A DNA stretch of 64,000 nt, taken from Euprymna scolopes (lineage: Eukaryota). The stretch is from NCBI GenBank assembly GCA_053919585.1, contig CM132809.1; one strand, written 5' to 3'. A program made the position numbers and the translations under genes. The notes under the pieces are model-generated. The model ran no database searches and had not been told where the DNA came from. It saw only the letters and a program-made list of their open reading frames with translations. Below, piece after piece: positions 1 to 60,035 of this stretch (position 1 is its first letter; every line of letters starts with the position of its first letter).

Positions 1-3000
1 AGTGTTACTACTCATATGCATCGATAGATTTGATTTCTCAGGACAGGAATACTCCAATTGTTCCAAGGAATATGACTTTTCCTCAGTGTTACTACTCATA
101 TGCATCGGTAGATTTGATTTCTCAGTAAAGAAATACTCCAATTGTTCCAAGGAATATGACTTTTCCTCAGTGTTACTACTCATATGCATCGATAGATTTG
201 ATTTCTCAGGACAGGAATACTCCAATTGTTCCAAGGAATATGACTTTTCCTCAGTGTTACTACTCATATGCATCGGTAGATTTTATTTCTCATGACAGGA
301 ATACTCCAATTGTTCCAAGGAATATGACTTTTCCTCAGTGTTACTACTCATATGCATCGATAGATTTGATTTCTCAGGACAGGAATACTCCAATTGTTCC
401 AAGGAATATGACTTTTCCTCAGTGTTACTACTCATATGCATCGGTAGATTTGATTTCTCAGGAAAGAAATACTCCAATTGTTCCAAGGAATATGACTTTT
501 CCTCAGTGTTACTACTCATATGCATCGATAGATTTGATTTCTCAGGACAGGAATACTCCAATTGTTCCAAGGAATATGACTTTTCCTCAGTGTTACTACT
601 CATATGCATCGGTAGATTTGATTTCTCAGGAAAGAAATACTCCAATTGTTCCAAGGAATATGACTTTTCCTCAGTGTTACTACTCATATGCATCGATAGA
701 TTTGATTTCTCAGGACAGGAATACTCCAATTGTTCCAAGGAATATGACTTTTCCTCAGTGTTACTACTCATATGCATCGGTAGATTTGATTTCTCAGGAC
801 AGGAATACTCCAATTGTTCCAAGGAATATGACTTTTCCTCAGTGTTACTACTCATATGCATCGATAGATTTGATTTCTCAGGACAGGAATACTCCAATTG
901 TTCAAAGGAATATGACTTTTCCTCAGTGTTACTACTCATATGCATCGGTAGATTTGATTTCTCAGGACAGGTATACTCCAATTGTTCCAAGGAATATGAC
1001 TTTTCCTCAGTGTTACTACTCATATGCATCGATAGATTTGATTTCTCAGGACAGGTATACTCCAATTGTTTCAAGGAATATGACTTTTCCTCAGTGTTAG
1101 TACTCATATGCATCGGTAGATTTGATTTCTCAGGACAGGAATACTCCAATTGTTCCAAGGAATATGACTTTTCCTCAGTGTTACTACTCATATGCATCGA
1201 TAGATTTGATTTCACAGGACAGAAATACTCCAATTGTTCCAAGGAATATAACTTTTCCTCAGTGTTACTACTCATATGCATCGGTAGATTTGATTTCTCA
1301 GGACAGGAATACTCCCATTGTTCCAAGGAATATGACTTTTCCTCAGTGTTACTACTCATATGCATCGATAGATTTGATTTCTCAGGACAGGTATACTCCA
1401 ATTGTTCCAAGGAATATGACTTTTCCTCAGTGTTACTACTCATATGCATCGGTAGATTTGATTTCTCAGGACAGGAATACTCCAATTGTTCCAAGGAATA
1501 TGACTTTTCCTCAGTGTTACTACTCATATGCATCGATAGATTTGATTTCTCAGGACAGGTATACTCCAATTGTTCCAAGGAATATGACTTTTCCTCAGTA
1601 TTACTACTCATATGCATCGGTAGATTTGATTTCTCAGGACAGGAATACTCCAATTGTTCCAAGGAATATGACTTTTCCTCAGTGTTACTACTCATATGCA
1701 TCGGTAGATTTGATTTCTCAGGACAGGTATACTCCAATTGTTCCAAGGAATATGACTTTTCCTCAGTGTTACTACTCATATGCATCGATAGATTTGATTT
1801 CTCAGGACAGGTATACTCCAATTGTTCCAAGGAATATGACTTTTCCTCAGTGTTACTACTCATATGCATCGGTAGATTTGATTTCTCAGGACAGGAATAC
1901 TCCAATTGTTCCAAGGAATATGACTTTTCCGCAGTGTTAGTACTTATATGCATCGGTAGATTTGATTTCTCAGGACAGGAATACTCCAATTGTTCCAAGG
2001 AATATGACTTTTCCTCAGTGTTACTACTCATATGCATCGATAGATTTGATTCCTCAGGACAGGTATACTCCAATTGTTCCAAGGAATATGACTTTTCCTC
2101 AGTGTTAGTACTCATATGCATCGGTAGATTTGATTTCTCAGGACAGGAATACTCCAATTGTTCCAAGGAATATGACTTTTCCTCAGTGTTACTACTCATA
2201 TGCATCGGTAGATTTGATTTCTCAGGACAGGAATACTCCAATTGTTCCAAGGAATATGACTTTTCCTCAGTGTTACTACTCATATGCATCGGTAGATTTG
2301 ATTTCTCAGGACAGGTATACTCCAATTGTTCCAAGGAATATGACTTTTCCTCAGTGTTACTACTCATATGCATCGGTAGATTTGATTTCTCAGGACGGGT
2401 ATACTCCAATTGTTCCAAGGAATATGACTTTTCCTCAGTGTTAGTACTCATGTGCATCGGTAGATTTGATTTCTCAGGACAGGAATACTCCAATTGTTCC
2501 AAGGAATATGACTTTTCCTCAGTGTTACTACTCATATGCATCGGTAGATTTGATTTCTCAGGACAGGTATACTCCAATTGTTCCAAGGAATATGACTTTT
2601 CCTCAGTGTTACTACTCATATGCATCGGTAGATTTGATTTCTCAGGACAGGAATACTCCAATTGTTCCAAGGAATATGATTTTTCCTCAGTGTTACTACT
2701 CATATGCATCGATAGATTTGATTTCTCAGGACAGGAATACTCCAATTGTTCCAAGGAATATGACTTTTCCTCAGTGTTACTACTCATATGCATCGATAGA
2801 TTTGATTTCTCAGGACAGAAATACTCCAATTGTTCCAAGGAATATGAATTTTCCTCCGTGTTACTACTCATATGCATCGGTAGATTTTATTTCTCAGGAC
2901 AGAAATACTCCAATTGTTCCAAGGAATATGACTTTTCCTCAGTGTTAGTACTCATATGCATCGGTAGATTTGATTTCTCAGGACAGGAATACTCCAATTG

Positions 3001-6000
3001 TTCCAAGGAATATGACTTTTCCTCAGTGTTACTACTCATATGCATCGGTAGATTTGATTTCTCAGGACAGAAATACTCCAATTGTTCCAAGGAATGCTCC
3101 AATTCTTCCAAGGAATATGACTTTTCCGCAGTTTTAGTACTCATATGCATCGGTAGATTTGATTTCTCAGGACAGGAATACTCCAATTGTTCCAAGGAAT
3201 ATGACTTTTCCTCCGTGTTACTACTAATATGCATCGATAGATTTGATGTCTCAGGACAGAAATACTCCAATTGTTCCAAGGAATGCTCCAATTCTTCCAA
3301 GCAATATGACTTTTCCTCAGTGTTAGTACTCATATGCATCGGTAGATTTGATTTCTCAGGACAGGAATACTCCAATTGTTCCAAGGAATATGACTTTTTC
3401 TCAGTGTTACTACTCATATGCATCGATAGATTTTATTTCTCAGGACAGGAATACTCCAATTGTTCCAAGGAATATGACTTTTCCTCAGTGTTACTACTCA
3501 TATGCATCGGTAGATTTGATTTCTCAGGACAGGAATACTCCAATTGTTCCAAGGAATATGACTTTTCCTCAGTGTTACTACTCATATGCATCGGTAGATT
3601 TGATTTCTCAGGACAGGAATACTCCAATTGTTCCAAGGAATATGACTTTTCCTCAGTGTTACTACTCATATGCATCGGTAGATTTGATTTCTCAGGAAAG
3701 AAATACTCCAATTGTTCCAAGGAATATGACTTTTCCTCAGTGTTAGTACTCATATGCATCGGTAGATTTGATTTCTCAGGACAGGAATACTCCAATTGTT
3801 CCAAGGAATATGACTTTTCCTCAGTGTTACTACTCATATGCATCGATAGATTTGATTTCTCAGGAAAGAAATACTCCAATTGTTCCAAGGAATATGACTT
3901 TTCCTCAGTGTTAGTACTCATATGCATCGGTAGATTTGATTTCTCAGGAAAGAAATACTCCAATTGTTCCAAGGAATATGACTTTTCCTCAGTGTTACTA
4001 CTCATATGCATCGGTAGATTTGATTTCTCAGAAAAGAAATACTCCAATTGTTCCAAGGAATATGACTTTTCCTCAGTGTTACTACTCATATGCATCGATA
4101 GATTTGATTTCTCAGGAAAGAAATACTCCAATTGTTCCAAGGAATATGACTTTTCCTCAGTATTAGTACTCATATGCATCGGTAGATTTGATTTCTCAGG
4201 AAAGAAATACTCCAATTGTTCCAAGGAATATGACTTTTCCTCAGTGTTACTACTCATATGCATCGGTAGATTTGATTTCTCAGGAAAGAAATACTCCAAT
4301 TGTTCCAAGGAATATGACTTTTCCTCAGTGTTACTACTCATATGCATCGGTAGATTTGATTTCTCAGGAAAGAAATACTCCAATTGTTCCAAGGAATATG
4401 ACTTTTCCTCAGTGTTACTACTCATATGCATCGGTAGATTTGATTTCTCAGGAAAGAAATACTCCAATTGTTCCAAGGAATATGACTTTTCCTCAGTGTT
4501 ACTACTCATATGCATCGATAGATTTGATTTCTCAGGACAGGAATACTCCAATTGTTCCAAGGAATATGACTTTTCCTCAGTGTTACTACTCATATGCATC
4601 GGTAGATTTGATTTCTCAGTAAAGAAATACTCCAATTGTTCCAAGGAATATGACTTTTCCTCAGTGTTACTACTCATATGCATCGATAGATTTGATTTCT
4701 CAGGACAGGAATACTCCAATTGTTCCAAGGAATATGACTTTTCCTCAGTGTTACTACTCATATGCATCGGTAGATTTTATTTCTCATGACAGGAATACTC
4801 CAATTGTTCCAAGGAATATGACTTTTCCTCAGTGTTACTACTCATATGCATCGATAGATTTGATTTCTCAGGACAGGAATACTCCAATTGTTCCAAGGAA
4901 TATGACTTTTCCTCAGTGTTACTACTCATATGCATCGGTAGATTTGATTTCTCAGGAAAGAAATACTCCAATTGTTCCAAGGAATATGACTTTTCCTCAG
5001 TGTTACTACTCATATGCATCGATAGATTTGATTTCTCAGGACAGGAATACTCCAATTGTTCCAAGGAATATGACTTTTCCTCAGTGTTACTACTCATATG
5101 CATCGGTAGATTTGATTTCTCAGGAAAGAAATACTCCAATTGTTCCAAGGAATATGACTTTTCCTCAGTGTTACTACTCATATGCATCGATAGATTTGAT
5201 TTCTCAGGACAGGAATACTCCAATTGTTCCAAGGAATATGACTTTTCCTCAGTGTTACTACTCATATGCATCGGTAGATTTGATTTCTCAGGACAGGAAT
5301 ACTCCAATTGTTCCAAGGAATATGACTTTTCCTCAGTGTTACTACTCATATGCATCGATAGATTTGATTTCTCAGGACAGGAATACTCCAATTGTTCAAA
5401 GGAATATGACTTTTCCTCAGTGTTACTACTCATATGCATCGGTAGATTTGATTTCTCAGGACAGGAATACTACAATTGTTCCAAGGAATATGACTTTTCC
5501 TCAGTGTTACTACTCATATGCATCGGTAGATTTGATTTCTCAGGACAGGAATACTCCAATTCTTCCAAGGAATATGACTTTTCCTCAGTGTTACTACTCA
5601 TATGCATCGATAGATTTGATTTCTCAGGACAGGAATACTCCAATTGTTCCAAGGAATATGACTTTTCCTCAGTGTTACTACTCATATGCATCGGTAGATT
5701 TGATTTCTCAGGACAGGAATACTCCAATTGTTCCAAGGAATATGACTTTTCCTCAGTGTTACTACTCATATGCATCGGTAGATTTGATTTCTCAGGACAG
5801 GAATACTCCAATTCTTCCAAGGAATATGACTTTTCCTCAGTGTTACTACTCATATGCATCGATAGATTTGATTTCTCAGGACAGGAATACTCCAATTGTT
5901 CCAAGGAATATGACTTTTCCTCAGTGTTACTACTCATATGCATCGATAGATTTGATTTCTCAGGACAGGAATACTCCAATTGTTCCAAGGAATATGACTT

Positions 6001-18000: not shown

Positions 18001-21000
18001 TAGATTTGATTTCTCAGGACAGGAATTCTCCAATTGTTCCAAGGAATATGACTTTTCCGCAGTGTTACTACTCATATGCATCGATAGATTTGATTACTCA
18101 GGACAGGAATACTCCAATTGTTCCAAGGAATATGACTTTTCCTCAGTGTTACTACTCATATGCATCGATAGATTTGATTTCTCAGGACAGGAATACTCCA
18201 ATTGTTCCAAGGAATATGACTTTTCCTCAGTGTTACTACTCATATGCATCGGTAGATTTGATTTCTCAGGACAGGAATTCTCCAATTGTTCCAAGGAATA
18301 TGACTTTTCCTCAGTGTTACTACTCATATGCATCGATAGATTTGATTTCTCAGGACAGGAATACTCCAATTGTTCCAAGGAATATGACTTTTCCTCAGTG
18401 TTACTACTCATATGCATCGGTAGATTTGATTTCTCAGGACAGGAATACTCCAATTGTTCCAAGGAATATGACTTTTCCTCAGTGTTACTACTCATATGCA
18501 TCGGTAGATTTGATTTCTCAGGACAGGAATACTCCAATTGTTCCAAGGAATATGACTTTTCCTCAGTGTTACTACTCATATGCATCGATAGATTTGATTT
18601 CTCAGGACAGGAATACTCCAATTGTTCCAAGGAATATGACTTTTCCTCAGTGTTACTACTCATATGCATCGATAGATTTGATTTCTCAGGACAGGAATAC
18701 TCCAATTGTTCCAAGGAATATGACTTTTCCTCAGTGTTACTACTCATATGCATCGGTAGATTTGATTTCTCAGGACAGGAATACTCCAATTGTTCCAAGG
18801 AATATGACTTTTCCTCAGTGTTACTACTCATATGCATCGGTAGATTTGATTTCTCAGGACAGGAATTCTCCAATTGTTCCAAGGAATATGACTTTTCCGC
18901 AGTGTTACTACTCATATGCATCGGTAGATTTGATTTCTCAGGACAGGTATACTCCAATTGTTCCAAGGAATATGACTTTTCCTCAGTGTTACTACTCATA
19001 TGCATCGGTAGATTTGATTTCTCAGGACAGGAATTCTCCAATTGTTCCAAGGAATATGACTTTTCCGCAGTGTTACTACTCATATGCATCGGTAGATTTG
19101 ATTTCTCAGGACAGGTATACTCCAATTGTTCCAAGGAATATGACTTTTCCTCAGTGTTACTACTCATATGCATCGATAGATTTGATTTCTCAGGACAGGA
19201 ATACTCCAATTGTTCCAAGGAATATGACTTTTCCTCAGTGTTACTACTCATATGCATCGGTAGATTTGATTTCTTAGGACAGGAATACTCCAATTGTTCC
19301 AAGGAATATGACTTTTCCTCAGTGTTACTACTCATATGCATCGATAGATTTGATTTCTCAGGACAGGAATACTCCAATTGTTCCAAGGAATATGACTTTT
19401 CCTCAGTGTTACTACTCATATGCATCGGTAGATTTGATTTCTCAGGACAGGAATACTCCAATTGTTCCAAGGAATATGACTTTTCCTCAGTGTTACTACT
19501 CATATGCATCGGTAGATTTGATTTCTCAGGACAGGAATACTCCAATTGTTCCAAGGAATATGACTTTTCCTCAGTGTTACTACTCATATGCATCGGTAGA
19601 TTTGATTTCTCAGGAAAGAAATACTCCAATTGTTCCAAGGAATATGACTTTTCCTCAGTGTTACTACTCATATGCATCGATAGATTTGATTTCTCAGGAC
19701 AGGAATACTCCAATTGTTCCAAGGAATATGACTTTTCCTCAGTGTTACTACTCATATGCATCGGTAGATTTGATTTCTCAGGACAGGAATACTCCAATTG
19801 TTCCAAGGAATATGACTTTTCCTCAGTGTTACTACTCATATGCATCGGTAGATTTGATTTCTCAGGAAAGAAATACTCCAATTGTTCCAAGGAATATGAC
19901 TTTTCCTCAGTGTTACTACTCATATGCATCGATAGATTTGATTTCTCAGGACAGGAATACTCCAATTGTTCCAAGGAATATGACTTTTCCTCAGTGTTAC
20001 TACTCATATGCATCGATAGATTTGATTTCTCAGGACAGGAATACTCCAATTGTTCCAAGGAATATGACTTTTCCGCAGTGTTACTACTCATATGCATCGA
20101 TAGATTTGATTTCTCAGGACAGGAATACTCCAATTGTTCCAAGGAATATGACTTTTCCTCAGTGTTACTACTCATATGCATCGATAGATTTGATTTCTCA
20201 GGACAGAAATACTCCAATTGTTCCAAGGAATATGACTTTTCCGCAGTGTTACTACTCATATGCATCGATAGATTTGATTTCTCAGGACAGGAATACTCCA
20301 ATTGTTCCAAGGAATATGACTTTTCCGCAGTGTTACTACTCATATGCATCGATAGATTTGATTTCTCAGGACAGGAATACTCCAATTGTTCCAAGGAATA
20401 TGACTTTTCCTCAGTGTTACTACTCATATGCATCGATAGATTTGATTTCTCAGGACAGGAATACTCCAATTGTTCCAAGGAATATGACTTTTCCTCAGTG
20501 TTACTACTCATATGCATCGGTAGATTTGATTTCTCAGGACAGAAATACTCCAATTGTTTCAAGGAATGCTCCAATTGTTCCAAGGAATATGACTTTTCCG
20601 CAATGTTACTACTCATATGCATCGGTAGATTTGATTTCTCAGGACAGGAATACTCCAATTGTTCCAAGGAATATGACTTTTCCGCAGTGTAAGTACTCAT
20701 ATGCATCGGTAGATTTGATTTCTCAGGACAGGAATACTCCAATTGTTCCAAGGAATATGACTTTTCCTCAGTGTTACTACTCATAGGCATCGGTAGATTT
20801 GATTTCTCAGGACAGGTATACTCCAATTGTTCCAAGGAATATGACTTTTCCTCAGTGTTACTACTCATATGCATCGGTAGATTTGATTTCTCAGGAAAGA
20901 AATACTCCAATTGTTCCAAGGAATATGACTTTTCCTCAGTGTTACTACTCATATGCATCGATAGATTTGATTTCTCAGGACAGGAATACTCCAATTGTTC

Positions 21001-24000
21001 CAAGGAATATGACTTTTCCTCAGTGTTACTACTCATATGCATCGGTAGATTTGATTTCTCAGGACAGGAATACTCCAATTGTTCCAAGGAATATGACTTT
21101 TCCTCAGTGTTACTACTCATATGCATCGGTAGATTTGATTTCTCAGGACAGGAATACTCCAATTGTTCCAAGGAATATGACTTTTCCTCAGTGTTACTAC
21201 TCATATGCATCGATAGATTTGATTTCTCAGGACAGGAATACTCCAATTGTTCCAAGGAATATGACTTTTCCTCAGTGTTACTACTCATATGCATCGATAG
21301 ATTTGATTTCTCAGGACAGGAATACTCCAATTGTTCATAGGAATATGACTTTTCCTCCGTGTTACTACTCATATGCATCGGTAGATTTGATTTCTCAGGA
21401 CAGAAATACTCCAATTGTTCCAAGGAATTCTCCAATTCTTCCAAGGAATATGACTTTTCCGCAATGTTACTACTCATATGCATCGGTAGATTTGATTTCT
21501 CAGGACAGGAATACTCCAATTGTTCCAAGGAATATGACTTTTCCGCAGTGTTAGTACTCATATGCATCGGTAGATTTGATTTCTCAGGACAGGAATACTC
21601 CAATTGTTCCAAGGAATATGACTTTTCCTCAGTGTTACTACTCATAGGCATCGGTAGATTAGATTTCTCAGGACAGGTATACTCCAATTGTTCCAAGGAA
21701 TATGACTTTTCCTCAGTGTTACTACTCATATGCATCGGTAGATTTGATTTCTCAGGACAGGAATACTCCAATTGTTCCAAGGAATATGACTTTTCCTCAG
21801 TGTTACTACTCATATGCATCGGTAGATTTGATTTCTCAGGACAGGAATTCTTCAATTGTTCCAAGGAATATGACTTTTCCGCAGTGTTACTACTCATATG
21901 CATCGATAGATTTGATTTCTCAGGACAGGAATACTCCAATTGTTCCAAGGAATATGACTTTTCCTCAGTGTTACTACTCATATGCATCGATAGATTTGAT
22001 TTCTCAGGACAGGAATACTCCAATTGTTCCAAGGAATATGACTTTTCCTCAGTGTTACTACTCATATGCATCGGTAGATTTGATTTCTCAGGAAAGAAAT
22101 ACTCCAATTGTTCCAAGGAATATGACTTTTCCTCAGTGTTACTACTCATATGCATCGATAGATTTGATTTCTCAGGACAGGAATACTCCAATTGTTCCAA
22201 GGAATATGACTTTTCCTCAGTGTTACTACTCATATGCATCGGTAGATTTGATTTCTCAGGACAGGAATACTCCAATTGTTCCAAGGAATATGACTTTTCC
22301 TCAGTGTTACTACTCATATGCATCGGTAGATTTGATTTCTCAGGACAAGAATACTCCAATTGTTCCAAGGAATATGACTTTTCCTCAGTGTTACTACTCA
22401 TATGCATCGATAGATTTGATTTCTCAGGACAGGAATACTCCAATTGTTCCAAGGAATATGACTTTTCCTCAGTGTTACTACTCATATGCATCGATAGATT
22501 TGATTTCTCAGGACAGGAATACTCCAATTGTTCCAAGGAATATGACTTTTCCTCAGTGTTACTACTCATATGCATCGATAGATTTGATTTCTCAGGACAG
22601 GAATACTCCAATTGTTCCAAGGAATATGACTTTTCCTCAGTGTTACTACTCATATGCATCGGTAGATTTGATTTCTCAGGACAGGAATACTCCAATTGTT
22701 CCAAGGAATATGACTTTTCCTCAGTGTTACTACTCATATGCATCGGTAGATTTGATTTCTCAGGACAGGAATTCTCCAATTGTTCCAAGGAATATGACTT
22801 TTCCGCAGTGTTACTACTCATATGCATCGGTAGATTTGATTTCTCAGGACAGGTATACTCCAATTGTTCCAAGGAATATGACTTTTCCTCAGTGTTACTA
22901 CTCATATGCATCGGTAGATTTGATTTCTCAGGACAGGAATTCTCCAATTGTTCCAAGGAATATGACTTTTCCGCAGTGTTACTACTCATATGCATCGGTA
23001 GATTTGATTTCTCAGGACAGGTATACTCCAATTGTTCCAAGGAATATGACTTTTCCTCAGTGTTACTACTCATATGCATCGGTAGATTTGATTTCTCAGG
23101 ACAGGAATACTCCAATTGTTTCAAGGAATATGACTTTTCCTCAGTGTTACTACTCATATGCATCGGTAGATTTGATTTCTCAGGAAAGAAATACTCCAAT
23201 TGTTCCAAGGAATATGACTTTTCCTCAGTGTTACTACTCATATGCATCGGTAGATTTGATTTCTCAGGACAGGAATACTCCAATTGTTCCAAGGAATATG
23301 ACTTTTCCTCAGTGTTACTACTCATATGCATCGGTAGATTTGATTTCTCAGGACAGGAATACTCCAATTGTTCCAAGGAATATGACTTTTCCTCAGTGTT
23401 ACTACTCATATGCATCGGTAGATTTGATTTCTCAGGACAGGAATACTCCAATTGTTCCAAGGAATATGACTTTTCCTCAGTGTTACTACTCATATGCATC
23501 GATAGATTTGATTTCTCAGGACAGGAATACTCCAATTGTTCCAAGGAATATGACTTTTCCTCAGTGTTACTACTCATATGCATCGATAGATTTGATTTCT
23601 CAGGACAGGAATACTCCAATTGTTCCAAGGAATATGACTTTTCCTCAGTGTTACTACTCATATGCATCGGTAGATTTGATTTCTCAGGAAAGAAATACTC
23701 CAATTGTTCCAAGGAATATGACTTTTCCTCAGTGTTACTACTCATATGCATCGGTAGATTTGATTTCTCAGGACAGGAATACTCCAATTGTTCCAAGGAA
23801 TATGACTTTTCCTCAGTGTTACTACTCATATGCATCGGTAGATTTGATTTCTCAGGACAGGAATACTCCAATTGTTCCAAGGAATATGACTTTTCCTCAG
23901 TGTTACTACTCATATGCATCGGTAGATTTGATTTCTCAGGACAGGAATACTGCAATTGTTCCAAGGAATATGACTTTTCCTCAGTGTTACTACTCATATG

Positions 24001-27000
24001 CATCGGTAGATTTGATTTCTCAGGACAGGAATTCTCCAATTGTTCCAAGGAATATGACTTTTCCGCAGTGTTACTACTCATATGCATCGATAGATTTGAT
24101 TTCTCAGGACAGGAATACTCCAATTGTTCCAAGGAATATGACTTTTCCTCAGTGTTACTACTCATATGCATCGATAGATTTGATTTCTCAGGACAGGAAT
24201 ACTCCAATTGTTCCAAGGAATATGACTTTTCCTCAGTGTTACTACTCATATGCATCGGTAGATTTGATTTCTCAGGAAAGAAATACTCCAATTGTTCCAA
24301 GGAATATGACTTTTCCTCAGTGTTACTACTCATATGCATCGGTAGATTTGATTTCTCAGGACAGGAATACTCCAATTGTTCCAAGGAATATGACTTTTCC
24401 TCAGTGTTACTACTCATATGCATCGGTAGATTTGATTTCTCAGGACAGGAATACTCCAATTGTTCCAAGGAATATGACTTTTCCTCAGTGTTACTACTCA
24501 TATGCATCGGTAGATTTGATTTCTCAGGACAGGAATACTCCAATTGTTCCAAGGAATATGACTTTTCCTCAGTGTTACTACTCATATGCATCGGTAGATT
24601 TGATTTCTCAGGAAAGAAATACTCCAATTGTTCCAAGGAATATGACTTTTCCTCAGTGTTACTACTCATATGAATCGGTAGATTTGATTTCTCAGGAAAA
24701 AAATACTCCAATTGTTCCAAGGAATATGACTTTTCCTCAGTGTTACTACTCATATGCATCGGTAGATTTGATTTCTCAGGACAGGAATACTCCAATTGTT
24801 CCAAGGAATATGACTTTTCCTCAGTGTTACTACTCATATGCATCGGTAGATTTGATTTCTCAGGACAGGAATACTCCAATTGTTCCAAGGAATATGACTT
24901 TTCCTCAGTGTTACTACTCATATGCATCGGTAGATTTGATTTCTCAGGACAGGAATACTCCAATTGTTCCAAGGAATATGACTTTTCCTCAGTGTTACTA
25001 CTCATATGCATCGGTAGATTTGATTTCTCAGGACAGGAATACTCCAATTGTTCCAAGGAATATGACTTTTCCTCAGTGTTACTACTCATATGCATCGGTA
25101 GATTTGATTTCTCAGGACAGGAATACTCCAATTGTTCCAAGGAATATGACTTTTCCTCAGTGTTACTACTCATATGCATCGGTAGATTTGATTTCTCAGG
25201 ACAGGAATACTCCAATTGTTCCAAGGAATATGACTTTTCCTCAGTGTTACTACTCATATGCATCGGTAGATTTGATTTCTCAGGACAGAAATACTCCAAT
25301 TGTTCCAAGGAATGCTCCAATTGTTCCAAGGAATATGACTTTTTCTCAGTGTTACTACTCATAGGCATCGGTAGATTTGATTTCTCAGGACAGGAATACT
25401 CCAATTGTTCCAAGGAATATGACTTTTCCTCAGTGTTACTACTCATATGCATCGGTAGATTTGATTTCTCAGGAAAGAAATACTCCAATTGTTCCAAGGA
25501 ATATGACTTTTCCTCAGTGTTACTACTCATATGCATCGGTAGATTTGATTTCTCAGGACAGGAATACTCCAATTGTTCCAAGGAATATGACTTTTCCTCA
25601 GTGTTACTACTCATATGCATCGGTAGATTTGATTTCTCAGGACAGGAATACTCCAATTGTTCCAAGGAATATGACTTTTCCTCAGTGTTACTATTCATAT
25701 GCATCGATAGATTTGATTTCTCAGGACAGGAATACTCCAATTGTTCCAAGGAATATGACTTTTCCTCAGTGTTACTACTCATATGCATCGATAGATTAGA
25801 TTTCTCAGGACAGGAATACTCCAATTGTTCCAAGGAATATGACTTTTCCTCAGTGTTACTACTCATATGCATCGGTAGATTTGATTTCTCAGGAAAGAAA
25901 TACTCCAATTGTTCCAAGGAATATGACTTTTCCTCAGTGTTACTACTCATATGCATCGGTAGATTTGATTTCTCAGGACAGGAATACTCCAATTGTTCCA
26001 AGGAATATGACTTTTCCTCAGTGTTACTACTCATATGCATCGGTAGATTTGATTTCTCAGGACAGGAATACTCCAATTGTTCCAAGGAATATGACTTTTC
26101 CTCAGTGTTACTACTCATATGCATCGGTAGATTTGATTTCTCAGGACAGGAATACTCCAATTGTTCCAAGGAATATGACTTTTCCTCAGTGTTACTACTC
26201 ATATGCATCGGTAGATTTGATTTCTCAGGACAGGAATACTCCAATTGTTCCAAGGAATATGACTTTTCCTCAGTGTTACTACTCATATGCATCGGTAGAT
26301 TTGATTTCTCAGGACAGGAATACTCCAATTGTTCCAAGGAATATGACTTTTCCTCAGTGTTACTACTCATATGCATCGGTAGATTTGATTTCTCAGGACA
26401 GGAATACTCCAATTGTTCCAAGGAATATGACTTTTCCTCAGTGTTACTACTCATATGCATCGGTAGATTTGATTTCTCAGGACAGGAATACTCCAATTGT
26501 TCCAAGGAATATGACTTTTCCTCAGTGTTACTACTCATATGCATCGGTAGATTTGATTTCTCAGGAAAGAAATACTCCAATTGTTCCAAGGAATATGACT
26601 TTTCCTCAGTGTTACTACTCATATGCATCGGTAGATTTGATTTCTCAGGAAAGAAATACTCCAATTGTTCCAAGGAATATGACTTTTCCTCAGTGTTACT
26701 ACTCATATGCATCGGTAGATTTGATTTCTCAGGACAGGAATACTCCAATTGTTCCAAGGAATATGACTTTTCCTCAGTGTTACTACTCATATGCATCGGT
26801 AGATTTGATTTCTCAGGACAGGAATACTCCAATTGTTCCAAGGAATATGACTTTTCCTCAGTGTTACTTCTCATATGCATCGGTAGATTTGATTTCTCAG
26901 GACAGGAATACTCCAATTGTTCCAAGGAATATGACTTTTCCTCAGTGTTACTACTCATATGCATCGGTAGATTTGATTTCTCAGGAAAGAAATACTCCAA

Positions 27001-30000
27001 TTGTTCCAAGGAATATGACTTTTCCTCAGTGTTACTACTCATATGCATCGATAGATTTGATTTCTCAGGACAGGAATACTCAAATTGTTCCACGGAATAT
27101 GACTTTTCCTCAGTGTTACTACTCATATGCATCGATAGATTTGATTTCTCAGGACAGGAATACTCCAATTGTTCCAAGGAATGCTCCAATTCTTCCAAGG
27201 AATATGACTTTTCCGCAGGATTAGTACTCATATGCATCGGTAGATTTGATTTCTCAGGACAGGAATACTCTAATTGTCCCAAGGAATATGACTTTTCCGC
27301 AGTGTTACTACTCATATGCATCGATAGATTTGATTTCTCAGGACAGGAATACTCCAATTGTTCCAAGGAATATGACTTTTCCTCAGTGTTACTACTCATA
27401 TGCATCGATAGATTTGATTTCTCAGGACAGGAATACTCCAATTGTTCCAAGGAATGCTCCAATTCTTCCAAGGAATATGACTTTTCCGCAGGATTAGTAC
27501 TCATATGCATCGGTAGATTTGATTTCTCAGGACAGGAATACTCCAATTGTTCCAAGGAATATGACTTTTCCTCAGTGTTACTACTCATATGCATCGGTAG
27601 ATTTGATTTCTCAGGAAAGAAATACTCCAATTGTTCCAAGGAATATGACTTTTCCTCAGTGTTACTACTCATATGCATCGGTAGATTTGATTTCTCAGGA
27701 CAGGAATACTCCAATTGTTCCAAGGAATATGACTTTTCCTCAGTGTTACTACTCATATGCATCGATAGATTTGATTTCTCAGGACAGGAATACTCCAATT
27801 GTTCCAAGGAATATGACTTTTCCTCAGTGTTACTACTCATATGCATCGGTAGATTTGATTTCTCAGGAAAGAAATACTCCAATTGTTCCAAGGAATATGA
27901 CTTTTCCTCAGTGTTACTACTCATATGCATCGGTAGATTTGATTTCTCAGGAAAGAAATACTCCAATTGTTCCAAGGAATATGACTTTTCCTCAGTGTTA
28001 CTACTCATATGCATCGGTAGATTTGATTTCTCAGGACAGGAATACTCCAATTGTTCCAAGGAATATGACTTTTCCTCAGTGTTACTACTCATATGCATCG
28101 GTAGATTTGATTTCTCAGGACAGGAATACTCCAATTGTTCCAAGGAATATGACTTTTCCTCAGTGTTACTACTCATATGCATCGGTAGATTTGATTTCTC
28201 AGGAAAGAAATACTCCAATTGTTCCAAGGAATATGACTTTTCCTCAGTGTTACTACTCATATGCATCGGTAGATTTGATTTCTCAGGACAGGAATACTCC
28301 AATTGTTCCAAGGAATATGACTTTTCCTCAGTGTTACTACTCATATGCATCGGTAGATTTGATTTCTCAGGACAGGAATACTCCAATTGTTCCAAGGAAT
28401 ATGACTTTTCCTCAGTGTTACTACTCATATGCATCGGTAGATTTGATTTCTCAGGACAGGAATACTCCAATTGTTCCAAGGAATATGACTTTTCCTCAGT
28501 GTTACTACTCATATGCATCGGTAGATTTGATTTCTCAGGACAGAAATACTCCAATTGTTCCAAGGAATTCTCCAATTGTTCCAAGGAATATGACTTTTCC
28601 TCAGTGTTACTACTCATAGGCATCGGTAGATTTGATTTCTCAGGACAGGAATACTCCAATTGTTCCAAGGAATATGACTTTTCCTCAGTGTTACTACTCA
28701 TATGCATCGGTAGATTTGATTTCTCAGGAAAGAAATACTCCAATTGTTCCAAGGAATATGACTTTTCCTCAGTGTTACTACTCATATGCATCGGTAGATT
28801 TGATTTCTCAGGACAGGAATACTCCAATTGTTCCAAGGAATATGACTTTTCCTCAGTGTTACTACTCATATGCATCGGTAGATTTGATTTCTCAGGACAG
28901 GAATACTCCAATTGTTCCAAGGAATATGACTTTTCCTCAGTGTTACTATTCATATGCATCGATAGATTTGATTTCTCAGGACAGGAATACTCCAATTGTT
29001 CCAAGGAATATGACTTTTCCTCAGTGTTACTACTCATATGCATCGATAGATTTGATTTCTCAGGACAGGAATACTCCAATTGTTCCAAGGAATATGACTT
29101 TTCCTCAGTGTTACTACTCATATGCATCGGTAGATTTGATTTCTCAGGAAAGAAATACTCCAATTGTTCCAAGGAATATGACTTTTCCTCAGTGTTACTA
29201 CTCATATGCATCGGTAGATTTGATTTCTCAGGACAGGAATACTCCAATTGTTCCAAGGAATATGACTTTTCCTCAGTGTTACTACTCATATGCATCGGTA
29301 GATTTGATTTCTCAGGACAGGAATACTCCAATTGTTCCAAGGAATATGACTTTTCCTCAGTGTTACTACTCATATGCATCGGTAGATTTGATTTCTCAGG
29401 ACAGGAATACTCCAATTGTTCCAAGGAATATGACTTTTCCTCAGTGTTACTACTCATATGCATCGGTAGATTTGATTTCTCAGGACAGGAATACTCCAAT
29501 TGTTCCAAGGAATATGACTTTTCCTCAGTGTTACTACTCATATGCATCGGTAGATTTGATTTCTCAGGACAGGAATACTCCAATTGTTCCAAGGAATATG
29601 ACTTTTCCTCAGTGTTACTACTCATATGCATCGGTAGATTTGATTTCTCAGGACAGGAATACTCAAATTGTTCCAAGGAATATGACTTTTCCTCAGTATT
29701 ACTACTCATATGCATCGGTAGATTTGATTTCTCAGGACAGGAATACTCCAATTGTTCCAAGGAATATGACTTTTCCTCAGTGTTACTACTCATATGCATC
29801 GGTAGATTTGATTTCTCAGGAAAGAAATACTCCAATTGTTCCAAGGAATATGACTTTTCCTCAGTGTTACTACTCATATGCATCGGTAGATTTGATTTCT
29901 CAGGAAAGAAATACTCCAATTGTTCCAAGGAATATGACTTTTCCTCAGTGTTACTACTCATATGCATCGGTAGATTTGATTTCTCAGGACAGGAATACTC

Positions 30001-33000
30001 CAATTGTTCCAAGGAATATGACTTTTCCTCAGTGTTACTACTCATATGCATCGGTAGATTTGATTTCTCAGGACAGGAATACTCCAATTGTTCCAAGGAA
30101 TATGACTTTTCCTCAGTGTTACTTCTCATATGCATCGGTAGATTTGATTTCTCAGGACAGGAATACTCCAATTGTTCCAAGGAATATGACTTTTCCTCAG
30201 TGTTACTACTCATATGCATCGATAGATTTGATTTCTCAGGACAGGAATACTCCAATTGTTCCAAGGAATATGACTTTTCCTCAGTGTTACTACTCATATG
30301 CATCGATAGATTTGATTTCTCAGGACAGGAATACTCCAATTGTTCCAAGGAATGCTCCAATTCTTCCAAGGAATATGACTTTTCCGCAGGATTAGTACTC
30401 ATATGCATCGGTAGATTTGATTTCTCAGGACAGGAATACTCTAATTGTCCCAAGGAATATGACTTTTCCACAGTGTTACTACTCATATGCATCGATAGAT
30501 TTGATTTCTCAGGACAGGAATACTCCAATTGTTCCAAGGAATATGACTTTTCCTCAGTGTTACTACTCATATGCATCGATAGATTTGATTTCTCAGGACA
30601 GGAATACTCCAATTGTTCCAAGGAATATGACTTTTCCTCAGTGTTACTACTCATATGCATCGATAGATTTGATTTCTCAGGACAGGAATACTCCAATTGT
30701 TCCAAGGAATGCTCCAATTCTTCCAAGGAATATGACTTTTCCGCAGGATTAGTACTCATATGCATCGGTTGATTTGATTTCTCAGGACAGGAATACTCCA
30801 ATTGTTCCAAGGAATATGACTTTTCCTCAGTGTTACTACTCATATGCATCGGTAGATTTGATTTCTCAGGACAGGAATACTCCAATTGTTCCAAGGAATA
30901 TGATTTTTCCTCAGTGTTACTACTCATATGCATCGATAGATTTGATTTCTCAGGACAGGAATACTCCAATTGTTCCAAGGAATATGACTTTTCCTCAGTG
31001 TTACTACTCATATGCATCGATAGATTTGATTTCTCAGGACAGGAATACTCCAATTGTTCCAAGGAATATGACTTTTCCTCAGTGTTACTACTCATATGCA
31101 TCGGTAGATTTGATTTCTCAGGACAGGAATACTCCAATTGTTCCAAGGAATATGACTTTTCCTCAGTGTTACTACTCATATGCATCGGTAGATTTGATTT
31201 CTCAGGAAAGAAATACTCCAATTGTTCCAAGGAATATGACTTTTCCTCAGTGTTACTACTCATATGCATCGGTAGATTTGATTTCTCAGGAAAGAAATAC
31301 TCCAATTGTTCCAAGGAATATGACTTTTCCTCAGTGTTACTACTCATATGCATCGGTAGATTTGATTTCTCAGGACAGGAATACTCCAATTGTTCCAAGG
31401 AATATGACTTTTCCTCAGTGTTACTACTCATATGCATCGGAAGATTTGATTTCTCAGGACAGGAATACTCCAATTGTTCCAAGGAATATGACTTTTCCTC
31501 AGTGTTACTTCTCATATGCATCGGTAGATTTGATTTCTCAGGACAGGAATACTCCAATTGTTCCAAGGAATATGACTTTTCCTCAGTGTTACTACTCATA
31601 TGCATCGGTAGATTTGATTTCTCAGGAAAGAAATACTCCAATTGTTCCAAGGAATATGACTTTTCCTCAGTGTTACTACTCATATGCATCGGTAGATTTG
31701 ATTTCTCAGGACAGGAATACTCCAATTGTTCCAAGGAATATGACTTTTCCTCAGTGTTACTACTCATATGCATCGGTAGATTTGATTTCTCAGGACAGGA
31801 ATACTCCAATTGTTCCAAGGAATATGACTTTTCCTCAGTGTTACTACTCATATGCATCGATAGATTTGATTTCTCAGGACAGGAATACTCCAATTGTTCC
31901 AAGGAATATGACTTTTCCTCAGTGTTACTACTCATATGCATCGATGGATTTGATTTCTCAGGACAGGAATACTCCAATTGTTCCAAGGAATGCTCCAATT
32001 CTTCCAAGGAATATGACTTTTCCGCAGGATTAGTACTCATATGCATCGGTAGATTTGATTTCTCAGGACAGGAATACTCCAATTGTTCCAAGGAATATGA
32101 CTTTTCCTCAGTGTTACTACTCATATGCATCGGTAGATTTGATTTCTCAGGACAGGAATACTCCAATTGTTCCAAGGAATATGACTTTTCCTCAGTGTTA
32201 CTACTCATATGCATCGATAGATTTGATTTCTCAGGACAGGAATACTCCAATTGTTCCAAGGAATATGAATTTTCCTCAGGGTTTACTTCTCATATGCATC
32301 GATAGATTTGATTTCTCAGGACAGGAATACTCCAATTGTTCCAAGGAATGCTCCAATTCTTCCAAGGAATATGACTTTTCCGCAGGATTAGTACTCATAT
32401 GCATCGGTAGATTTGATTTCTCAGGACAGGAATACTCCAATTGTTCCAAGGAATATGACTTTTCCTCAGTGTTACTACTCATATGCATCGGTAGATTTGA
32501 TTTCTCAGGAAAGAAATACTCCAATTGTTCCAAGGAATATGACTTTTCCTCAGTGTTACTACTCATATGCATCGGTAGATTTGATTTCTCAGGACAGGAA
32601 TACTCCAATTGTTCCAAGGAATATGACTTTTCCTCAGTGTTACTACTCATATGCATCGATAGATTTGATTTCTCAGGACAGGAATACTCCAATTGTTCCA
32701 AGGAATATGACTTTTCCTCAGTGTTACTACTCATATGCATCGATAGATTTGATTTCTCAGGACAGGAATACTCCAATTGTTCCAAGGAATATGACTTTTC
32801 CTCCGTGTTACTACTCATATGCATCGGTAGATTTGATTTCTCAGGACAGAAATACTCCAATTGTTCCAAGGAATGCTCCAATTCTTCCAAGGAATATGAC
32901 TTTTCCGCAATGTTACTACTCATATGCATCGGTAGATTTGATTTCTCAGGACAGGAATACTCCAATTGTTCCAAGGAATATGACTTTTCCTCAGTGTTAT

Positions 33001-48000: not shown

Positions 48001-50781
48001 ACTTTTCCTCAGTGTTACTACTCATATGCATCGGTAGATTTGATTTCTCAGGAAAGAAATACTCCAATTGTTCCAAGGAATATGACTTTTCCTCAGTGTT
48101 ACTACTCATATGCATCGGTAGATTTGATTTCTCAGGACAGGAATACTCCAATTGTTCCAAGGAATATGACTTTTCCTCAGTGTTACTACTCATATGCATC
48201 GGTAGATTTGATTTCTCAGGACAGGAATACTCCAATTGTTCCAAGGAATATGACTTTTCCTCAGTGTTACTTCTCATATGCATCGGTAGATTTGATTTCT
48301 CACGACAGGAATACTCCAATTGTTCCAAGGAATATGACTTTTCCTCAGTGTTACTACTCATATGCATCGGTAGATTTGATTTCTCAGGAAAGAAATACTC
48401 CAATTGTTCCAAGGAATATGACTTTTCCTCAGTGTTACTACTCATATGCATCGGTAGATTTGATTTCTCAGGACAGGAATACTCCAATTGTTCCAAGGAA
48501 TATGACTTTTCCTCAGTGTTACTACTCATATGCATCGGTAGATTTGATTTCTCAGGACAGGAATACTCCAATTGTTCCAAGGAATATGACTTTTCCTCAG
48601 TGTTACTACTCATATGCATCGATAGATTTGATTTCTCAGGACAGGAATACTCCAATTGTTCCAAGGAATATGACTTTTCCTCAGTGTTACTACTCATATG
48701 CATCGATAGATTTGATTTCTCAGGACAGGAATACTCCAATTGTTCCAAGGAATGCTCCAATTCTTCCAAGGAATATGACTTTTCCGCAGGATTAGTACTC
48801 ATATGCATCGGTAGATTTGATTTCTCAGGACAGGAATACTCCAATTGTTCCAAGGAATATGACTTTTCCTCAGTGTTACTACTCATATGCATCGGTAGAT
48901 TTGATTTCTCAGGACAGGAATACTCCAATTGTTCCAAGGAATATGACTTTTCCTCAGTGTTACTACTCATATGCATCGATAGATTTGATTTCTCAGGACA
49001 GGAATACTCCAATTGTTCCAATGAATATGAATTTTCCTCCGTGTTACTACTCATATGCATCGGTAGATTTGATTTCTCAGGACAGAAATACTCCAATTGT
49101 TCCAAGGAATGCTCCAATTCTTCCAAGGAATATGACTTTTCCGCAATGTTACTACTCATATGCATCGGTAGATTTGATTTCTCAGGACAGGAATACTCCA
49201 ATTGTTCCAAGGAATATGACTTTTCCTCAGTGTTATTACTCATAGGCATCGGTAGATTTGATTTCTCAGGACAGGTATACTCCAATTGTTCCAAGGAATA
49301 TGACTTTTCCTCAGTGTTACTACTCATATGCATCGGTAGATTTGATTTCTCAGGAAAGAAATACTCCAATTGTTCCAAGGAATATGACTTTTCCTCAGTG
49401 TTACTACTCATATGCATCGGTAGATTTGATTTCTCAGGACAGGAATACTCCAATTGTTCCAAGGAATATGACTTTTCCTCAGTGTTACTACTCATATGCA
49501 TCGATAGATTTGATTTCTCAGGACAGGAATACTCCAATTGTTCCAAGGAATATGACTTTTCCTCAGTGTTACTACTCATATGCATCGGTAGATTTGATTT
49601 CTCAGGACAGGAATTCTCCAATTGTTCCAAGGAATATGACTTTTCCGCAGTGTTACTACTCATATGCATCGGTAGATTTGATTTCTCAGGACAGGAATAC
49701 TCCAATTGTTCCAAGGAATATGACTTTTCCTCAGTGTTACTACTCATATGCATCGGTAGATTTGATTTCTCAGGAAAGAAATACTCCAATTGTTCCAAGG
49801 AATATGACTTTTCCTCAGTGTTACTACTCATATGCATCGGTAGATTTGATTTCTCAGGACAGGAATTCTCCAATTGTTCCAAGGAATATGACTTTTCCGC
49901 AGTGTTACTACTCATATGCATCGGTAGATTTGATTTCTCAGGACAGGAATACTCCAATTGTTCCAAGGAATATGACTTTTCCTCAGTGTTACTACTCATA
50001 TGCATCGGTAGATTTGATTTCTCAGGAAAGAAATACTCCAATTGTTCCAAGGAATATGACTTTTCCTCAGTGTTACTACTCATATGCATCGGTAGATTTT
50101 ATTTCTCAGGACAGGTATACTCCAATTGTTCCAAGGAATATGACTTTTCCTCAGTGTTACTACTCATATGCATCGATAGATTTGATTTCTCAGGACAGGA
50201 ATACTCCAATTGTTCCAAGGAATATGACTTTTCCTCAGTGTTACTACTCATATGCATCGATAGATTTGATTACTCAGGACAGGAATACTCCAATTGTTCC
50301 AAGGAATATGACTTTTCCTCAGTGTTACTACTCATATGCATTGGTAGATTTGATTTCTCAGGACAGGAATTCTCCAATTGTTCCAAGGAATATGACTTTT
50401 CCGCAGTGTTACTACTCATATGCATCGGTAGATTTGATTTCTCAGGACAGGAATACTCCAATTGTTCCAAGGAATATGACTTTTCCTCAGTGTTACTACT
50501 CATATGCATCGATAGATTTGATTTCTCAGGACAGGAATACTCCAATTGTTCCAAGGAATATGACTTTTCCGCAGTGTTACTACTCATATGCATCGATAGA
50601 TTTGATTTCTCAGGACAGAAATACTCCAATTGTTCCAAGGAATATGACTTTTCCTCAGTGTTAGTACTCATATGCATCGATAGATTTGATTTCTCAGGAC
50701 AGGAATACTCCAATTGTTCCAAGGAATATGACTTTTCCTCGGTGTTACTACTCATATGCATCGGTAGATTTGATTTCTCAG
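1..50781. repeat. 84-bp tandem satellite array (~594 monomers, truncated by left window edge), derived from a C2H2 zinc-finger coding unit on the minus strand
   Basis: Consensus AGTGTTACTACTCATATGCATCG(G/A)TAGATTTGATTTCTCAGGACAGGAATACTCCAATTGTTCCAAGGAATATGACTTTTCCTC repeats head-to-tail with typically 0-4 substitutions per unit. The phase of the last unit start (50741) fits 594x84 + 40x21 + 4 exactly. The right boundary at 50781 is sharp. Confidence 0.99.
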
Positions 50782-51290
50782 ATTTGGTTTGTCCAGAATG
50801 AGTTCTTACAGGTTTCTCTTGATTTGATTAATCAGAACAAACAGTTTAACACCAATCCTTATATGTTTTGCTGAATTTGATTCATAAGAATAACAAATTT
50901 CAAATGAATCCTCAGCGTGGATTATCATATGTCGCATTAGATTTTATCTCTGAGAAAAAAAAATCGATGCACACATTATACAAAAATAAGAGTTTTCTCT
51001 TGTGTGGTTCATAATATTTTGCACTAGATTATTTTCTGAGAAGTGGAACATTCACAACTAAACAACAATATGGTTTATATTTACTGTGTACTTGTAGGTT
51101 TCAGTATTTTCTCATGACCAATTATTCAGGATTTTTTCTAGAAAATATAGGAATTTGAGATATATTCCTGCCACAGATGTCGGTTTATATCTTCCAAACA
51201 CCAATATGATTTTCTCTGTAGCAAATATTAAAGAAAATATAGACTCGTTCAGATTCAACAAAAGCGTTCAAGCAGGAACATCTGCAAAGA
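50782..51290 (-). pseudogene. Decayed C2H2 (Kruppel-type) zinc-finger gene remnant adjoining the satellite
   Basis: Manual minus-strand translation gives HSKYKPYCC (51088-51062), CECSTSQK (51056-51033), NLVQNIMNHTRENSYFCIMCASIFFSQR*NLMRHMIIH (to 50917) and VCSD*SNQEKPVRTHSGQTKS, which runs in frame into the satellite EKSNLPMH. Terminal His codons are 82 and 87 bp apart (84 with small indels). There are in-frame stops at 50944-46 and 50828-30 plus frameshifts. A possible splice acceptor TTTTTTCTTTGCAG ends at 51282. Confidence 0.85.
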
Positions 51291-55791: not shown

Positions 55792-55798
55792 ACGCAGA

Positions 55799-59965: not shown

Positions 59966-59969
<4 letters not shown>

Positions 59970-60035
<66 letters not shown>

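What the first reader, a model, noticed from the sequence alone, without database searches (positions are those of the whole stretch)
1..50781. A >50-kb satellite whose monomer is a 'dead' C2H2 zinc finger
Seen: the 84-bp unit reads YSLEQLEYSCPEKSNLPMHMSSNTEEKS on the minus strand. Established: tandem Kruppel fingers are 28 aa/84 bp with the pattern YxCxxCxxxFxxxSxLxxHxRxHTGEKP. The unit aligns without gaps: Y kept, CxxC->LEQL, KSNL kept, first His kept, second His->Asn, TGEKP->TEEKS. Three of four zinc ligands are gone and many units have Pro in the recognition helix, so it should not fold as a finger. Inference: one degenerate finger was amplified about 600-fold or more into satellite DNA, a gene-to-satellite conversion far larger than ordinary zinc-finger arrays.
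Basis: partly seen in the sequence, partly recalled or inferred. Interest (0 to 1): 0.9.

Follow-up and report, generated by a model that had tools for sequence, protein, structure and literature searches.

The report
Satellite DNA born from a zinc finger
A block of more than 50,000 bases of non-coding satellite DNA is about 600 near-identical copies of one decayed 84-base C2H2 zinc-finger repeat, with remnants of the parent finger array still attached at its edge, so its origin from a gene's coding repeat can be traced.

Summary
Observation confirmed. Window 1-50781 is one head-to-tail array of 594 whole units (550 of 84 bp, 40 of 105 bp, 4 of 85 bp), 1.4% from consensus on average. It runs off the window's left end. 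On the minus strand the consensus reads YSLEQLEYSCPEKSNLPMHMSSNTEEKS.

Interpretation supported.
- Database searches with that frame return only C2H2 zinc-finger proteins (17 of 17, best E 5.7e-51; exhaustive search 9,495 hits, best 1e-95).
- The equally periodic plus-1 frame returns nothing, and neither plus frame recalls zinc fingers in the protein atlas.
- One natural finger shares 15 of 28 residues with the unit.
- With the four zinc-ligand positions fixed, the other 24 residues score 42 bits against a finger profile, against 0.6 +/- 4.3 for permutations.
- The 500 bp next to the array, on the same strand, hold five decayed repeats that align to the unit. One still has all four ligands (0 of 5000 shuffles).

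The array is not coding: variants show no codon-position bias or avoidance of stops, and polyA RNA depth is near zero.

The nearest known analogue is the 84-bp coding minisatellite of PRDM9. First readers of this scan noted the same idea on other stretches of this genome; those notes are untested here.

The parts
1..50781 (-). 84-bp satellite array of 594 whole units, cut by the window's left end. The minus-strand frame reads as a C2H2 finger that has lost three of its four zinc ligands.
   Evidence: TRF; segmentation and consensus; homology to C2H2 proteins
50782..50840 (-). Boundary unit: a shortened, diverged satellite-like repeat that lacks roughly the P-M-H-M-S-S-N-T segment. In the satellite's frame it reads ..EKPVRTHSGQTK and then runs into the first array unit.
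   Evidence: Translation; alignment to the unit, shuffle P=0.006
50841..50907 (-). Two shortened, decayed finger repeats (C and D), reading ..FEICYSYESNSAKHIRIG..
   Evidence: Translation; alignment to the unit, P=0.014; weak profile match at 50895-50854
50908..50991 (-). Finger B: 28 codons reading YFCIMCASIFFSQR(stop)NLMRHMIIHAEDS. All four zinc ligands and the aromatic residue are present, with one in-frame stop and a Cys-to-His spacing of 13.
   Evidence: The pattern occurs in 0 of 5000 dinucleotide shuffles of the flank and nowhere in the other 12.4 kb; local C2H2 profile i-E 3.4e-4; DNA alignment to the unit, P<0.002; nhmmer E=0.01
50992..51090 (-). Finger A remnant, frameshifted. It reads ..HSKYKPYCC.. 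and then FHFSENNLVQNIMNHTRENS. The second His and a finger-to-finger linker H-T-x-E-x-S are kept.
   Evidence: Translations; H..linker..YxCxxC pattern in 0.6% of shuffles; alignment P=0.028
51091..51300 (-). Further decayed repeat or repeats of the same kind, and the upstream end of the recognisable pseudogene remnant.
   Evidence: Alignment to the unit, P=0.03; no Pfam match
3072..3117 (-). Example of the 21-bp internal duplication that makes the 105-bp unit variant (40 units). It adds seven codons and keeps the frame.
   Evidence: TRF period-21 and period-105 rows; translations of the 105-bp units

Best explanation
The array is non-coding satellite DNA whose 84-bp monomer descends from one repeat of a Kruppel-type C2H2 zinc-finger array. 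The parent was a multi-finger coding exon, itself an 84-bp tandem repeat. After or while the gene decayed, out-of-register pairing between neighbouring finger repeats (unequal exchange or replication slippage) expanded one variant. That variant had lost both cysteines and the second histidine. Repeated unequal exchange and gene conversion then homogenised the array, and later duplications of blocks of tens of units lengthened it. The neighbouring fingers, not swept up in the expansion, decayed in place and remain as a stop- and frameshift-ridden remnant at 50782-51300. Shown here: the array's structure, its non-coding mode of variation, the homology of the monomer to C2H2 fingers, and the finger remnant at the edge. 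Inferred: the order of events and the recombination mechanism.
For: (1) Structure: TRF; 594 units at 1.4% divergence; exact multi-unit duplications up to 1.9 kb at offsets of 2.4-12 kb.
(2) Homology: a 500-aa translation of the minus-0 frame finds 17 proteins, all carrying PF00096 zf-C2H2, best E 5.7e-51. An exhaustive phmmer search finds 9,495 hits, best 1e-95. Eight of the ten looked up are named zinc finger proteins and two are unnamed. BLASTP alignments are in finger register over 250-300 residues at 30-32% identity.
(3) Controls: the plus-1 frame of the same array, also 28-aa periodic and open, gives no hit. In the protein atlas the minus-0 frame recalls C2H2 families, while neither plus frame does.
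(4) Best single natural finger: 15 of 28 residues identical, including C-E-Q-C-E-Y-S against L-E-Q-L-E-Y-S and S-N-L-x-M-H-M.
(5) Profile tests: 10.3 bits as it stands, 0/2000 shuffles and 0/2000 permutations as high. With ligand positions fixed, 42.3 bits against 0.6 +/- 4.3.
(6) Flank: a complete finger pattern 130-210 bp from the edge on the same strand, 0/5000 shuffles. Five successive flank blocks each align to the unit around the same anchor. Read codon by codon by eye, N-L-M-R-H-M-I-I-H-A-E-D-S lines up with N-L-P-M-H-M-S-S-N-T-E-E-K-S, placing His where the satellite has Asn.
(7) Not coding: variation by codon position is 1.8/2.0/0.4%. There is no depletion of stop-making variants (OR 1.1, p=0.79) and no excess of silent ones (p=0.71). 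PolyA RNA depth over the satellite is about 0.3, against 100-1300 over the nearby retrotransposon.
Against: Pfam's own zf-C2H2 and zf-H2C2_2 models do not match the unit. The zf-C2H2_16 match (3.9e-12) is a sum over ten repeats, and control frames get equally strong spurious matches to unrelated families. My local finger profile was built from proteins found with the query, which biases it somewhat at variable positions. The N-terminal half of the unit has no clear DNA similarity to finger B; only the C-terminal half does (about 69% by eye). There is no gradual divergence gradient inside the array at this edge. No close parent gene was found: the best natural proteins are 40% identical and come from unrelated animals. 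Each Cys-to-Leu change needs two substitutions to the same TTG codon, which is unexplained. The host genome outside this window could not be searched.
Confidence: 0.87

Rival explanations
1. The finger belonged to a mobile element rather than a host gene. For example, it could be the N-terminal zinc fingers of a site-specific non-LTR retrotransposon, or a transposon that had captured a finger array. The satellite would then be transposon-derived like many others.
For: Retrotransposon pieces lie within 3 kb (ORF 54769-55287 whose relatives carry RVT_1). Unchecked notes of this scan mention finger-bearing LINEs in this genome. No N-terminal host domain could be recognised upstream of the remnant.
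Against: The finger remnant at 50896-51078 has low depth in DNA runs (9 in X3, where a 197-nt contig of depth 8.3 spans it). The transposon pieces reach 10^5-10^6. The nearby retrotransposon ORF is on the opposite strand. At least five successive repeats with Kruppel-type H-T-x-E-x-S linkers are more than such elements usually carry (established knowledge of R2-type elements: one to three fingers).
Confidence: 0.07
2. The array is still a gene: a giant repetitive protein that evolved from zinc fingers, read from the long open frames (up to 4,731 codons).
For: The longest open run on the minus-0 frame is 4,731 codons at 18097-32289. Indels are mostly multiples of 21 bp, which keep the frame. 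Runs labelled RNA hold satellite words.
Against: Two other frames are also open for 1,200-2,000 codons, as expected from homogeneity alone. Third codon positions vary least. Stop-making and silent variants occur at neutral rates. Sixteen of the 550 84-bp units carry stops, and 85-bp units shift the frame. PolyA RNA depth is about 0.3.
Confidence: 0.03
3. The likeness to zinc fingers is chance, helped by the 28-codon period that any 84-bp repeat shares with finger arrays.
For: Tandem translations produce spurious Pfam scores of 1e-11 to 1e-18 in every open frame. Three of the four ligands are absent.
Against: The control frame gives no hits in the same search. Shuffle and permutation tests find no case as good. 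An independent complete finger lies next to the array in the same strand and register.
Confidence: 0.03

Closest known systems
PRDM9 zinc-finger array, a 'coding minisatellite' of 84-bp repeats (PMC3890296, read)
   Same: The unit is 84 bp and encodes one C2H2 finger. Repeat number changes by unequal exchange between units, and there is concerted turnover within the array.
   Different: PRDM9 has about 8-20 units, is translated, keeps all zinc ligands and is under selection at DNA-contact residues. Here there are about 600 or more units, three ligands are lost in nearly every unit, variation is neutral and polyA RNA is near zero.
Satellite DNAs with a traceable source sequence (transposon-derived or intron-derived satellites; reviews and cases listed, e.g. 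PMC9659126, PMC7004042, bioRxiv 10.1101/213868)
   Same: A short pre-existing tandem or repeat-prone segment is amplified into a long homogeneous array, with block duplications and an identifiable progenitor locus.
   Different: The source here is a protein-coding repeat of a host-type transcription-factor domain, not a transposon or intron. A 2025 satellite-DNA review mentions zinc fingers only in a cited title about engineered zinc-finger transcription factors.
Natural C2H2 fingers of the C-x-x-C-E-Y-S-x subclass, e.g. fingers of P0058, P0026 and P0021 (lepidopteran proteins named zinc finger protein 431/271) and of P0001 (marine metagenome)
   Same: 13-15 of 28 residues are identical to the unit, in the same register. 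These include E-Q at positions 4-5, E-Y-S at 7-9, S-N-L at 14-16, H-M at 19-20 and T-x-E-K at 24-27.
   Different: They keep Cys3, Cys6 and His23 and the G and P of the linker. They are from unrelated animals, so they show the class of finger, not the parent gene.
Tandem repeats of 70-90 bp reported next to expanded C2H2 genes in the octopus genome, and beta-satellite next to human zinc-finger clusters (recalled from memory of Albertin et al. 2015; the paper is not in the held library)
   Same: An association of finger-sized tandem repeats with zinc-finger gene clusters in a mollusc.
   Different: This is unverified here. As I recall it, the repeats were described as flanking features, not as descendants of the fingers themselves. 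The host of this window is coded and not known to be an octopus.

Membership tests
Classical (Kruppel-type) C2H2 zinc-finger repeat | Repeat period of 28 residues / 84 bp | tested here: met
   550 of 594 units are exactly 84 bp
Classical (Kruppel-type) C2H2 zinc-finger repeat | Four zinc ligands, C-x2-4-C-x12-H-x3-5-H | tested here: not met
   The satellite unit keeps only His19. Positions 3, 6 and 23 are Leu, Leu and Asn in 543-546 of 550 units. Flank finger B has all four, with a spacing of 13. The unit is therefore a descendant of a finger, not a finger.
Classical (Kruppel-type) C2H2 zinc-finger repeat | Conserved non-ligand residues (aromatic at 1, hydrophobic core at 8/10 and 16, T-G-E-K-P linker) | tested here: met
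   Y1, Y8, C10 (F in 85 units), L16 and T24-x-E26-K27 are present. With ligands fixed the rest scores 42.3 bits against 0.6 +/- 4.3 for permutations.
Classical (Kruppel-type) C2H2 zinc-finger repeat | Significant match to curated family models (Pfam PF00096 / PF13465) | tested here: not met
   No match to PF00096 or PF13465. The only matches are summed ones to zf-C2H2_16 (46 bits) and zf-C2H2_7, of a strength that control frames also reach with unrelated families.
Classical (Kruppel-type) C2H2 zinc-finger repeat | Sequence homology to known members, above controls | tested here: met
   17 of 17 hits carry zf-C2H2, best E 5.7e-51. There are 9,495 hits in the exhaustive search. The control frame gives none.
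Satellite DNA | Long head-to-tail array of a short unit with high homogeneity | tested here: met
   More than 50.7 kb, 594 units, 1.4% from consensus
Satellite DNA | Non-coding | tested here: met
   Neutral pattern of variants in every open frame; polyA RNA depth about 0.3
Satellite DNA | Higher-order or block structure from unequal exchange | tested here: met
   Recurring strings of unit types; exact repeats up to 1,938 bp at offsets of 2.4-12 kb
Satellite DNA | High genomic copy number, several arrays, heterochromatic or centromeric location | tested here: inconclusive
   Summed contig depth on the satellite bin is 6-120 times that of the low-copy flank, but the tool states this is not a copy number. 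Other arrays are reported only in unchecked notes. Location is not testable here.
Coding minisatellite (PRDM9 type) | The array is translated and under selection | tested here: not met

The most novel reading that the evidence does not exclude
Zinc-finger exons may be a recurrent nursery of satellite DNA in this lineage. Because every finger array is already an 84-bp tandem repeat, any finger gene released from selection could run away into a satellite. Several independent arrays in this genome would then be separate births. This would also explain why finger-sized tandem repeats sit beside expanded zinc-finger clusters in some animals. A bolder form: the array is kept because it titrates or recruits the very proteins that silence zinc-finger clusters.
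Probability: 0.3. Interest if true: 0.78.

Novelty: new variant of a known kind. Interest (0 to 1): 0.66.

Why it matters
The origin of a satellite can rarely be traced, because arrays turn over quickly and progenitors are lost. Here the monomer can be assigned to a protein domain, residue by residue, and decayed sister repeats of the parent array are still attached. This gives a concrete, datable case of a coding tandem repeat escaping into satellite DNA. It also offers a testable route: internal repeats of a dead gene act as a seed for unequal exchange. In addition, it warns annotators that open frames of thousands of codons with zinc-finger similarity can be pure satellite.

Tried and rejected
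- Pfam on tandem translations. Scores are inflated by summing over repeats in every open frame: VGPC1_C at 1e-18 in the finger frame, DUF3775 and Bee_toxin at about 1e-11 in control frames. I did not use the zf-C2H2_16 hit as evidence.
- Pfam on stop-free pieces of the flank. The pieces are too short and broken, and nothing was significant.
- Host identification. The organism is coded. The retrotransposon ORF finds unnamed ENA proteins at 80-89% identity and Hydra proteins at 58%. The contigs of the best hits carry no species name. Runs labelled mollusc metagenome hold satellite words. No firm identification.
- Copy number from read laying. Contig word depths are summed and are not a copy number, so I left it open.
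- Divergence gradient inside the array towards the edge. None was found; units are 0-3 differences from consensus right up to 50781.
- The octopus genome paper, to check a remembered link between 70-90-bp repeats and C2H2 genes. It is not held.
- Earlier findings by sequence and by a long word list. Both came back blank.
- A close parent gene in the protein databases. None was found; the best is 40% identity in unrelated animals.
Full report
**What is there.** Tandem Repeats Finder reports a single array over 1-50781 with an 84-bp unit, neighbours 96-98% alike.
- GC content is flat at 0.37 across the array and drops to 0.22-0.37 in the flank.
- Anchoring on a conserved 15-mer gives 594 whole units: 550 of 84 bp, 40 of 105 bp and 4 of 85 bp. 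There are 91 distinct sequences, and mean divergence from consensus is 1.4%.
- The 105-bp variant is an in-frame 21-bp duplication.
- The window begins inside the array, so 50.8 kb is a lower bound.
- Strings of unit types recur, and exact repeats up to 1,938 bp occur at offsets of 2.4-12 kb. The array therefore also grew by duplicating blocks of tens of units.

**The reading frame.** The consensus is open in three of six frames.
- Long open runs exist in all three open frames: 4,731, 2,032 and 1,233 codons. This follows from homogeneity and from indels that are multiples of 21 bp, so openness is not evidence of coding.

**Is the finger likeness real?** Pfam is not a fair judge here. Ten tandem copies sum small chance similarities, so every open frame gets spurious hits of 1e-11 to 1e-18. 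The finger frame's hit to zf-C2H2_16 (3.9e-12) is no stronger than those, and PF00096 and PF13465 do not match. I therefore relied on controlled comparisons.
1. A 500-residue translation of minus-0, searched against 5.8 billion proteins, returned 17 hits. All carry zf-C2H2, best E 5.7e-51. The same search with 500 residues of the plus-1 frame, which is equally periodic and has two Cys per unit, returned nothing.
2. An exhaustive phmmer search of 1.84 billion representatives gave 9,495 hits at E up to 0.001 and 148 at 1e-30 or better, best 1e-95. Of the ten I looked up, eight are named zinc finger proteins and two are unnamed. They come from moths and butterflies, amphioxus, frogs and a fish.
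3. In the protein atlas the minus-0 frame recalls C2H2 families (9 of the 10 best hits that carry a family). Neither plus frame recalls any.
4. BLASTP alignments run in finger register for 250-300 residues at 30-32% identity.
5. Among 2,848 canonical fingers cut from the hit proteins, the best is [28 protein letters not shown] in P0058, which shares 15 of 28 residues with the unit. The unit belongs to the C-x-x-C-E-Y-S-x subclass, in which position 10 is often Cys, Ala or Thr.
6. Against a profile built from those fingers, the unit as it stands scores 10.3 bits. None of 2000 nucleotide shuffles (best of six frames) and none of 2000 residue permutations reach that.
7. With the four ligand positions fixed in both real and permuted sequences, for scoring only, the real order of the other 24 residues scores 42.3 bits. 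Permutations score 0.6 +/- 4.3, maximum 20.2, over 3000 trials.

The profile comes from proteins found with the query, so it is somewhat biased. The whole-database control in item 1 does not share that bias.

**The flank.** The first 500 bp beyond the array, on the same strand, contain decayed finger repeats (translations).
- At 50908-50991 the minus strand reads YFCIMCASIFFSQR(stop)NLMRHMIIHAEDS. This is an aromatic-x-C-x-x-C-x3-F...H-x3-H pattern with all four ligands. It occurs in 0 of 5000 dinucleotide shuffles of the flank and nowhere else in the remaining 12.4 kb.
- Upstream lies ..FHFSENNLVQNIMNHTRENS, a second finger's C-terminal half with an H-T-x-E-x-S linker.
- Read codon by codon by eye, N-L-M-R-H-M-I-I-H-A-E-D-S of finger B lines up with N-L-P-M-H-M-S-S-N-T-E-E-K-S of the satellite. 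His (CAC) sits where the satellite has Asn (AAC).
- Formal tests agree. nhmmer of the unit against the 13-kb flank gives E=0.01 at exactly this spot. The best peptide alignment is in the finger frame, P=0.016. Five successive blocks (50782-50840, 50841-50907, 50908-50991, 50992-51090, 51091-51300) each align to the unit around the same anchor, with shuffle P from <0.002 to 0.03.
- The block touching the array is a shortened satellite-like unit, not a finger.
- Inside the array there is no gradient: units are 0-3 differences from consensus right up to the edge.
- Because finger B keeps ligands that the satellite lacks, the direction of descent is finger to satellite, not the reverse.

**Coding or not.**
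- Variation by codon position in the finger frame is 1.8%, 2.0% and 0.4%, the opposite of purifying selection on a protein.
- Among the 62 distinct single-base variants, stop-making ones are not depleted (odds ratio 1.1, p=0.79) and silent ones are not enriched (p=0.71). The two other open frames behave the same way.
- Sixteen of the 550 84-bp units carry a stop, and four 85-bp units shift the frame.
- In a polyA RNA run read as raw reads, depth over the satellite is about 0.3. It is 100-1300 over the retrotransposon piece 3 kb away.
- Runs labelled RNA do hold satellite words, but DNA carry-over cannot be excluded. I conclude the array is non-coding and at most weakly transcribed.

**Source: host gene or mobile element?** The finger remnant has low depth in DNA runs: 9 in X3, where a 197-nt contig of depth 8.3 spans 50862-51058 with two differences. 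The neighbouring elements at 51445-51810 and 53824-56000 reach 10^4-10^6. The retrotransposon ORF at 54769-55287 is on the other strand. A host-type multi-finger gene is therefore the likelier parent. No upstream domain could be recognised, and the rest of the genome could not be searched.

**Mechanism (inferred).** A finger exon is already an 84-bp tandem repeat and is known to behave as a minisatellite in PRDM9 (PMC3890296). Once selection lapsed, unequal exchange or slippage between repeats could expand one variant without limit. Conversion and further unequal exchange then homogenised the array, and block duplications extended it. The nearly uniform loss of the same three ligands means the founder was already degenerate or the losses were fixed early. 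These data cannot tell which. Both Cys codons became the same Leu codon TTG, which takes two changes each. I have no explanation for that.

**Comparison with what is known.** The array works like any satellite. Its closest analogue by unit is the PRDM9 coding minisatellite. It fails the defining ligand test for a zinc finger and so is a descendant of one, not a member. My searches of the held literature found satellites traced to transposons and introns but none traced to a zinc-finger repeat. A 2025 review of satellite genomics mentions zinc fingers only in a cited title. I recall, but could not verify, a report of 70-90-bp tandem repeats beside expanded C2H2 genes in octopus. If the host is a related mollusc, the association would be known, although as I recall it, not the descent. 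First readers of this scan wrote the same idea for other stretches of this genome and for this flank. Of those notes, I tested only the one on this flank.

**Verdict.** Observation confirmed and interpretation supported, with confidence 0.87 for the finger origin. This is a new variant of a known kind, and interest is 0.66.

Noticed in passing
window 51445-51810: An extremely high-copy element. Summed contig depth is about 140,000 in run X1, against 20-60 for neighbouring low-copy sequence. It overlaps a 36-bp x2 repeat at 51422-51495.
   Followed up: no
window 53824-55560 (+): The 3' part of a non-LTR retrotransposon. The ORF at 54769-55287 has relatives carrying RVT_1, poly-A loose ends start at 55560, and polyA RNA covers it at depth 100-1300. 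The best named relatives are Hydra proteins at 58% identity.
   Followed up: partly
window 61219-61493: A 35-bp tandem repeat, about 8 copies, 93% matches.
   Followed up: no
window 63664-63999: A further tandem repeat of about 45 bp, open in several frames, that runs off the right end of the window. (TC)61 lies at 63265-63386 and (TA)103 at 59954-60158.
   Followed up: no
window 50697 / 50821: Contigs of two DNA runs join 50697 (inside a satellite unit) to 50821 (inside the flank), skipping 123 bp. This could be a second kind of satellite/flank junction, another locus or an allele. The shorter side is only 27 nt.
   Followed up: no
window 32317, 33893, 35364, 36940 (minus-strand unit starts): Four identical 85-bp units with a one-base insertion. 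Each sits in a block of about 1.5 kb that is repeated four times, so a frame-breaking variant was copied along with its block.
   Followed up: partly
array-wide, finger positions 3 and 6: Both former Cys codons are now the same Leu codon TTG in 542-543 of 550 units. Each needs two base changes from TGT or TGC. Unexplained.
   Followed up: no
   Followed up: no
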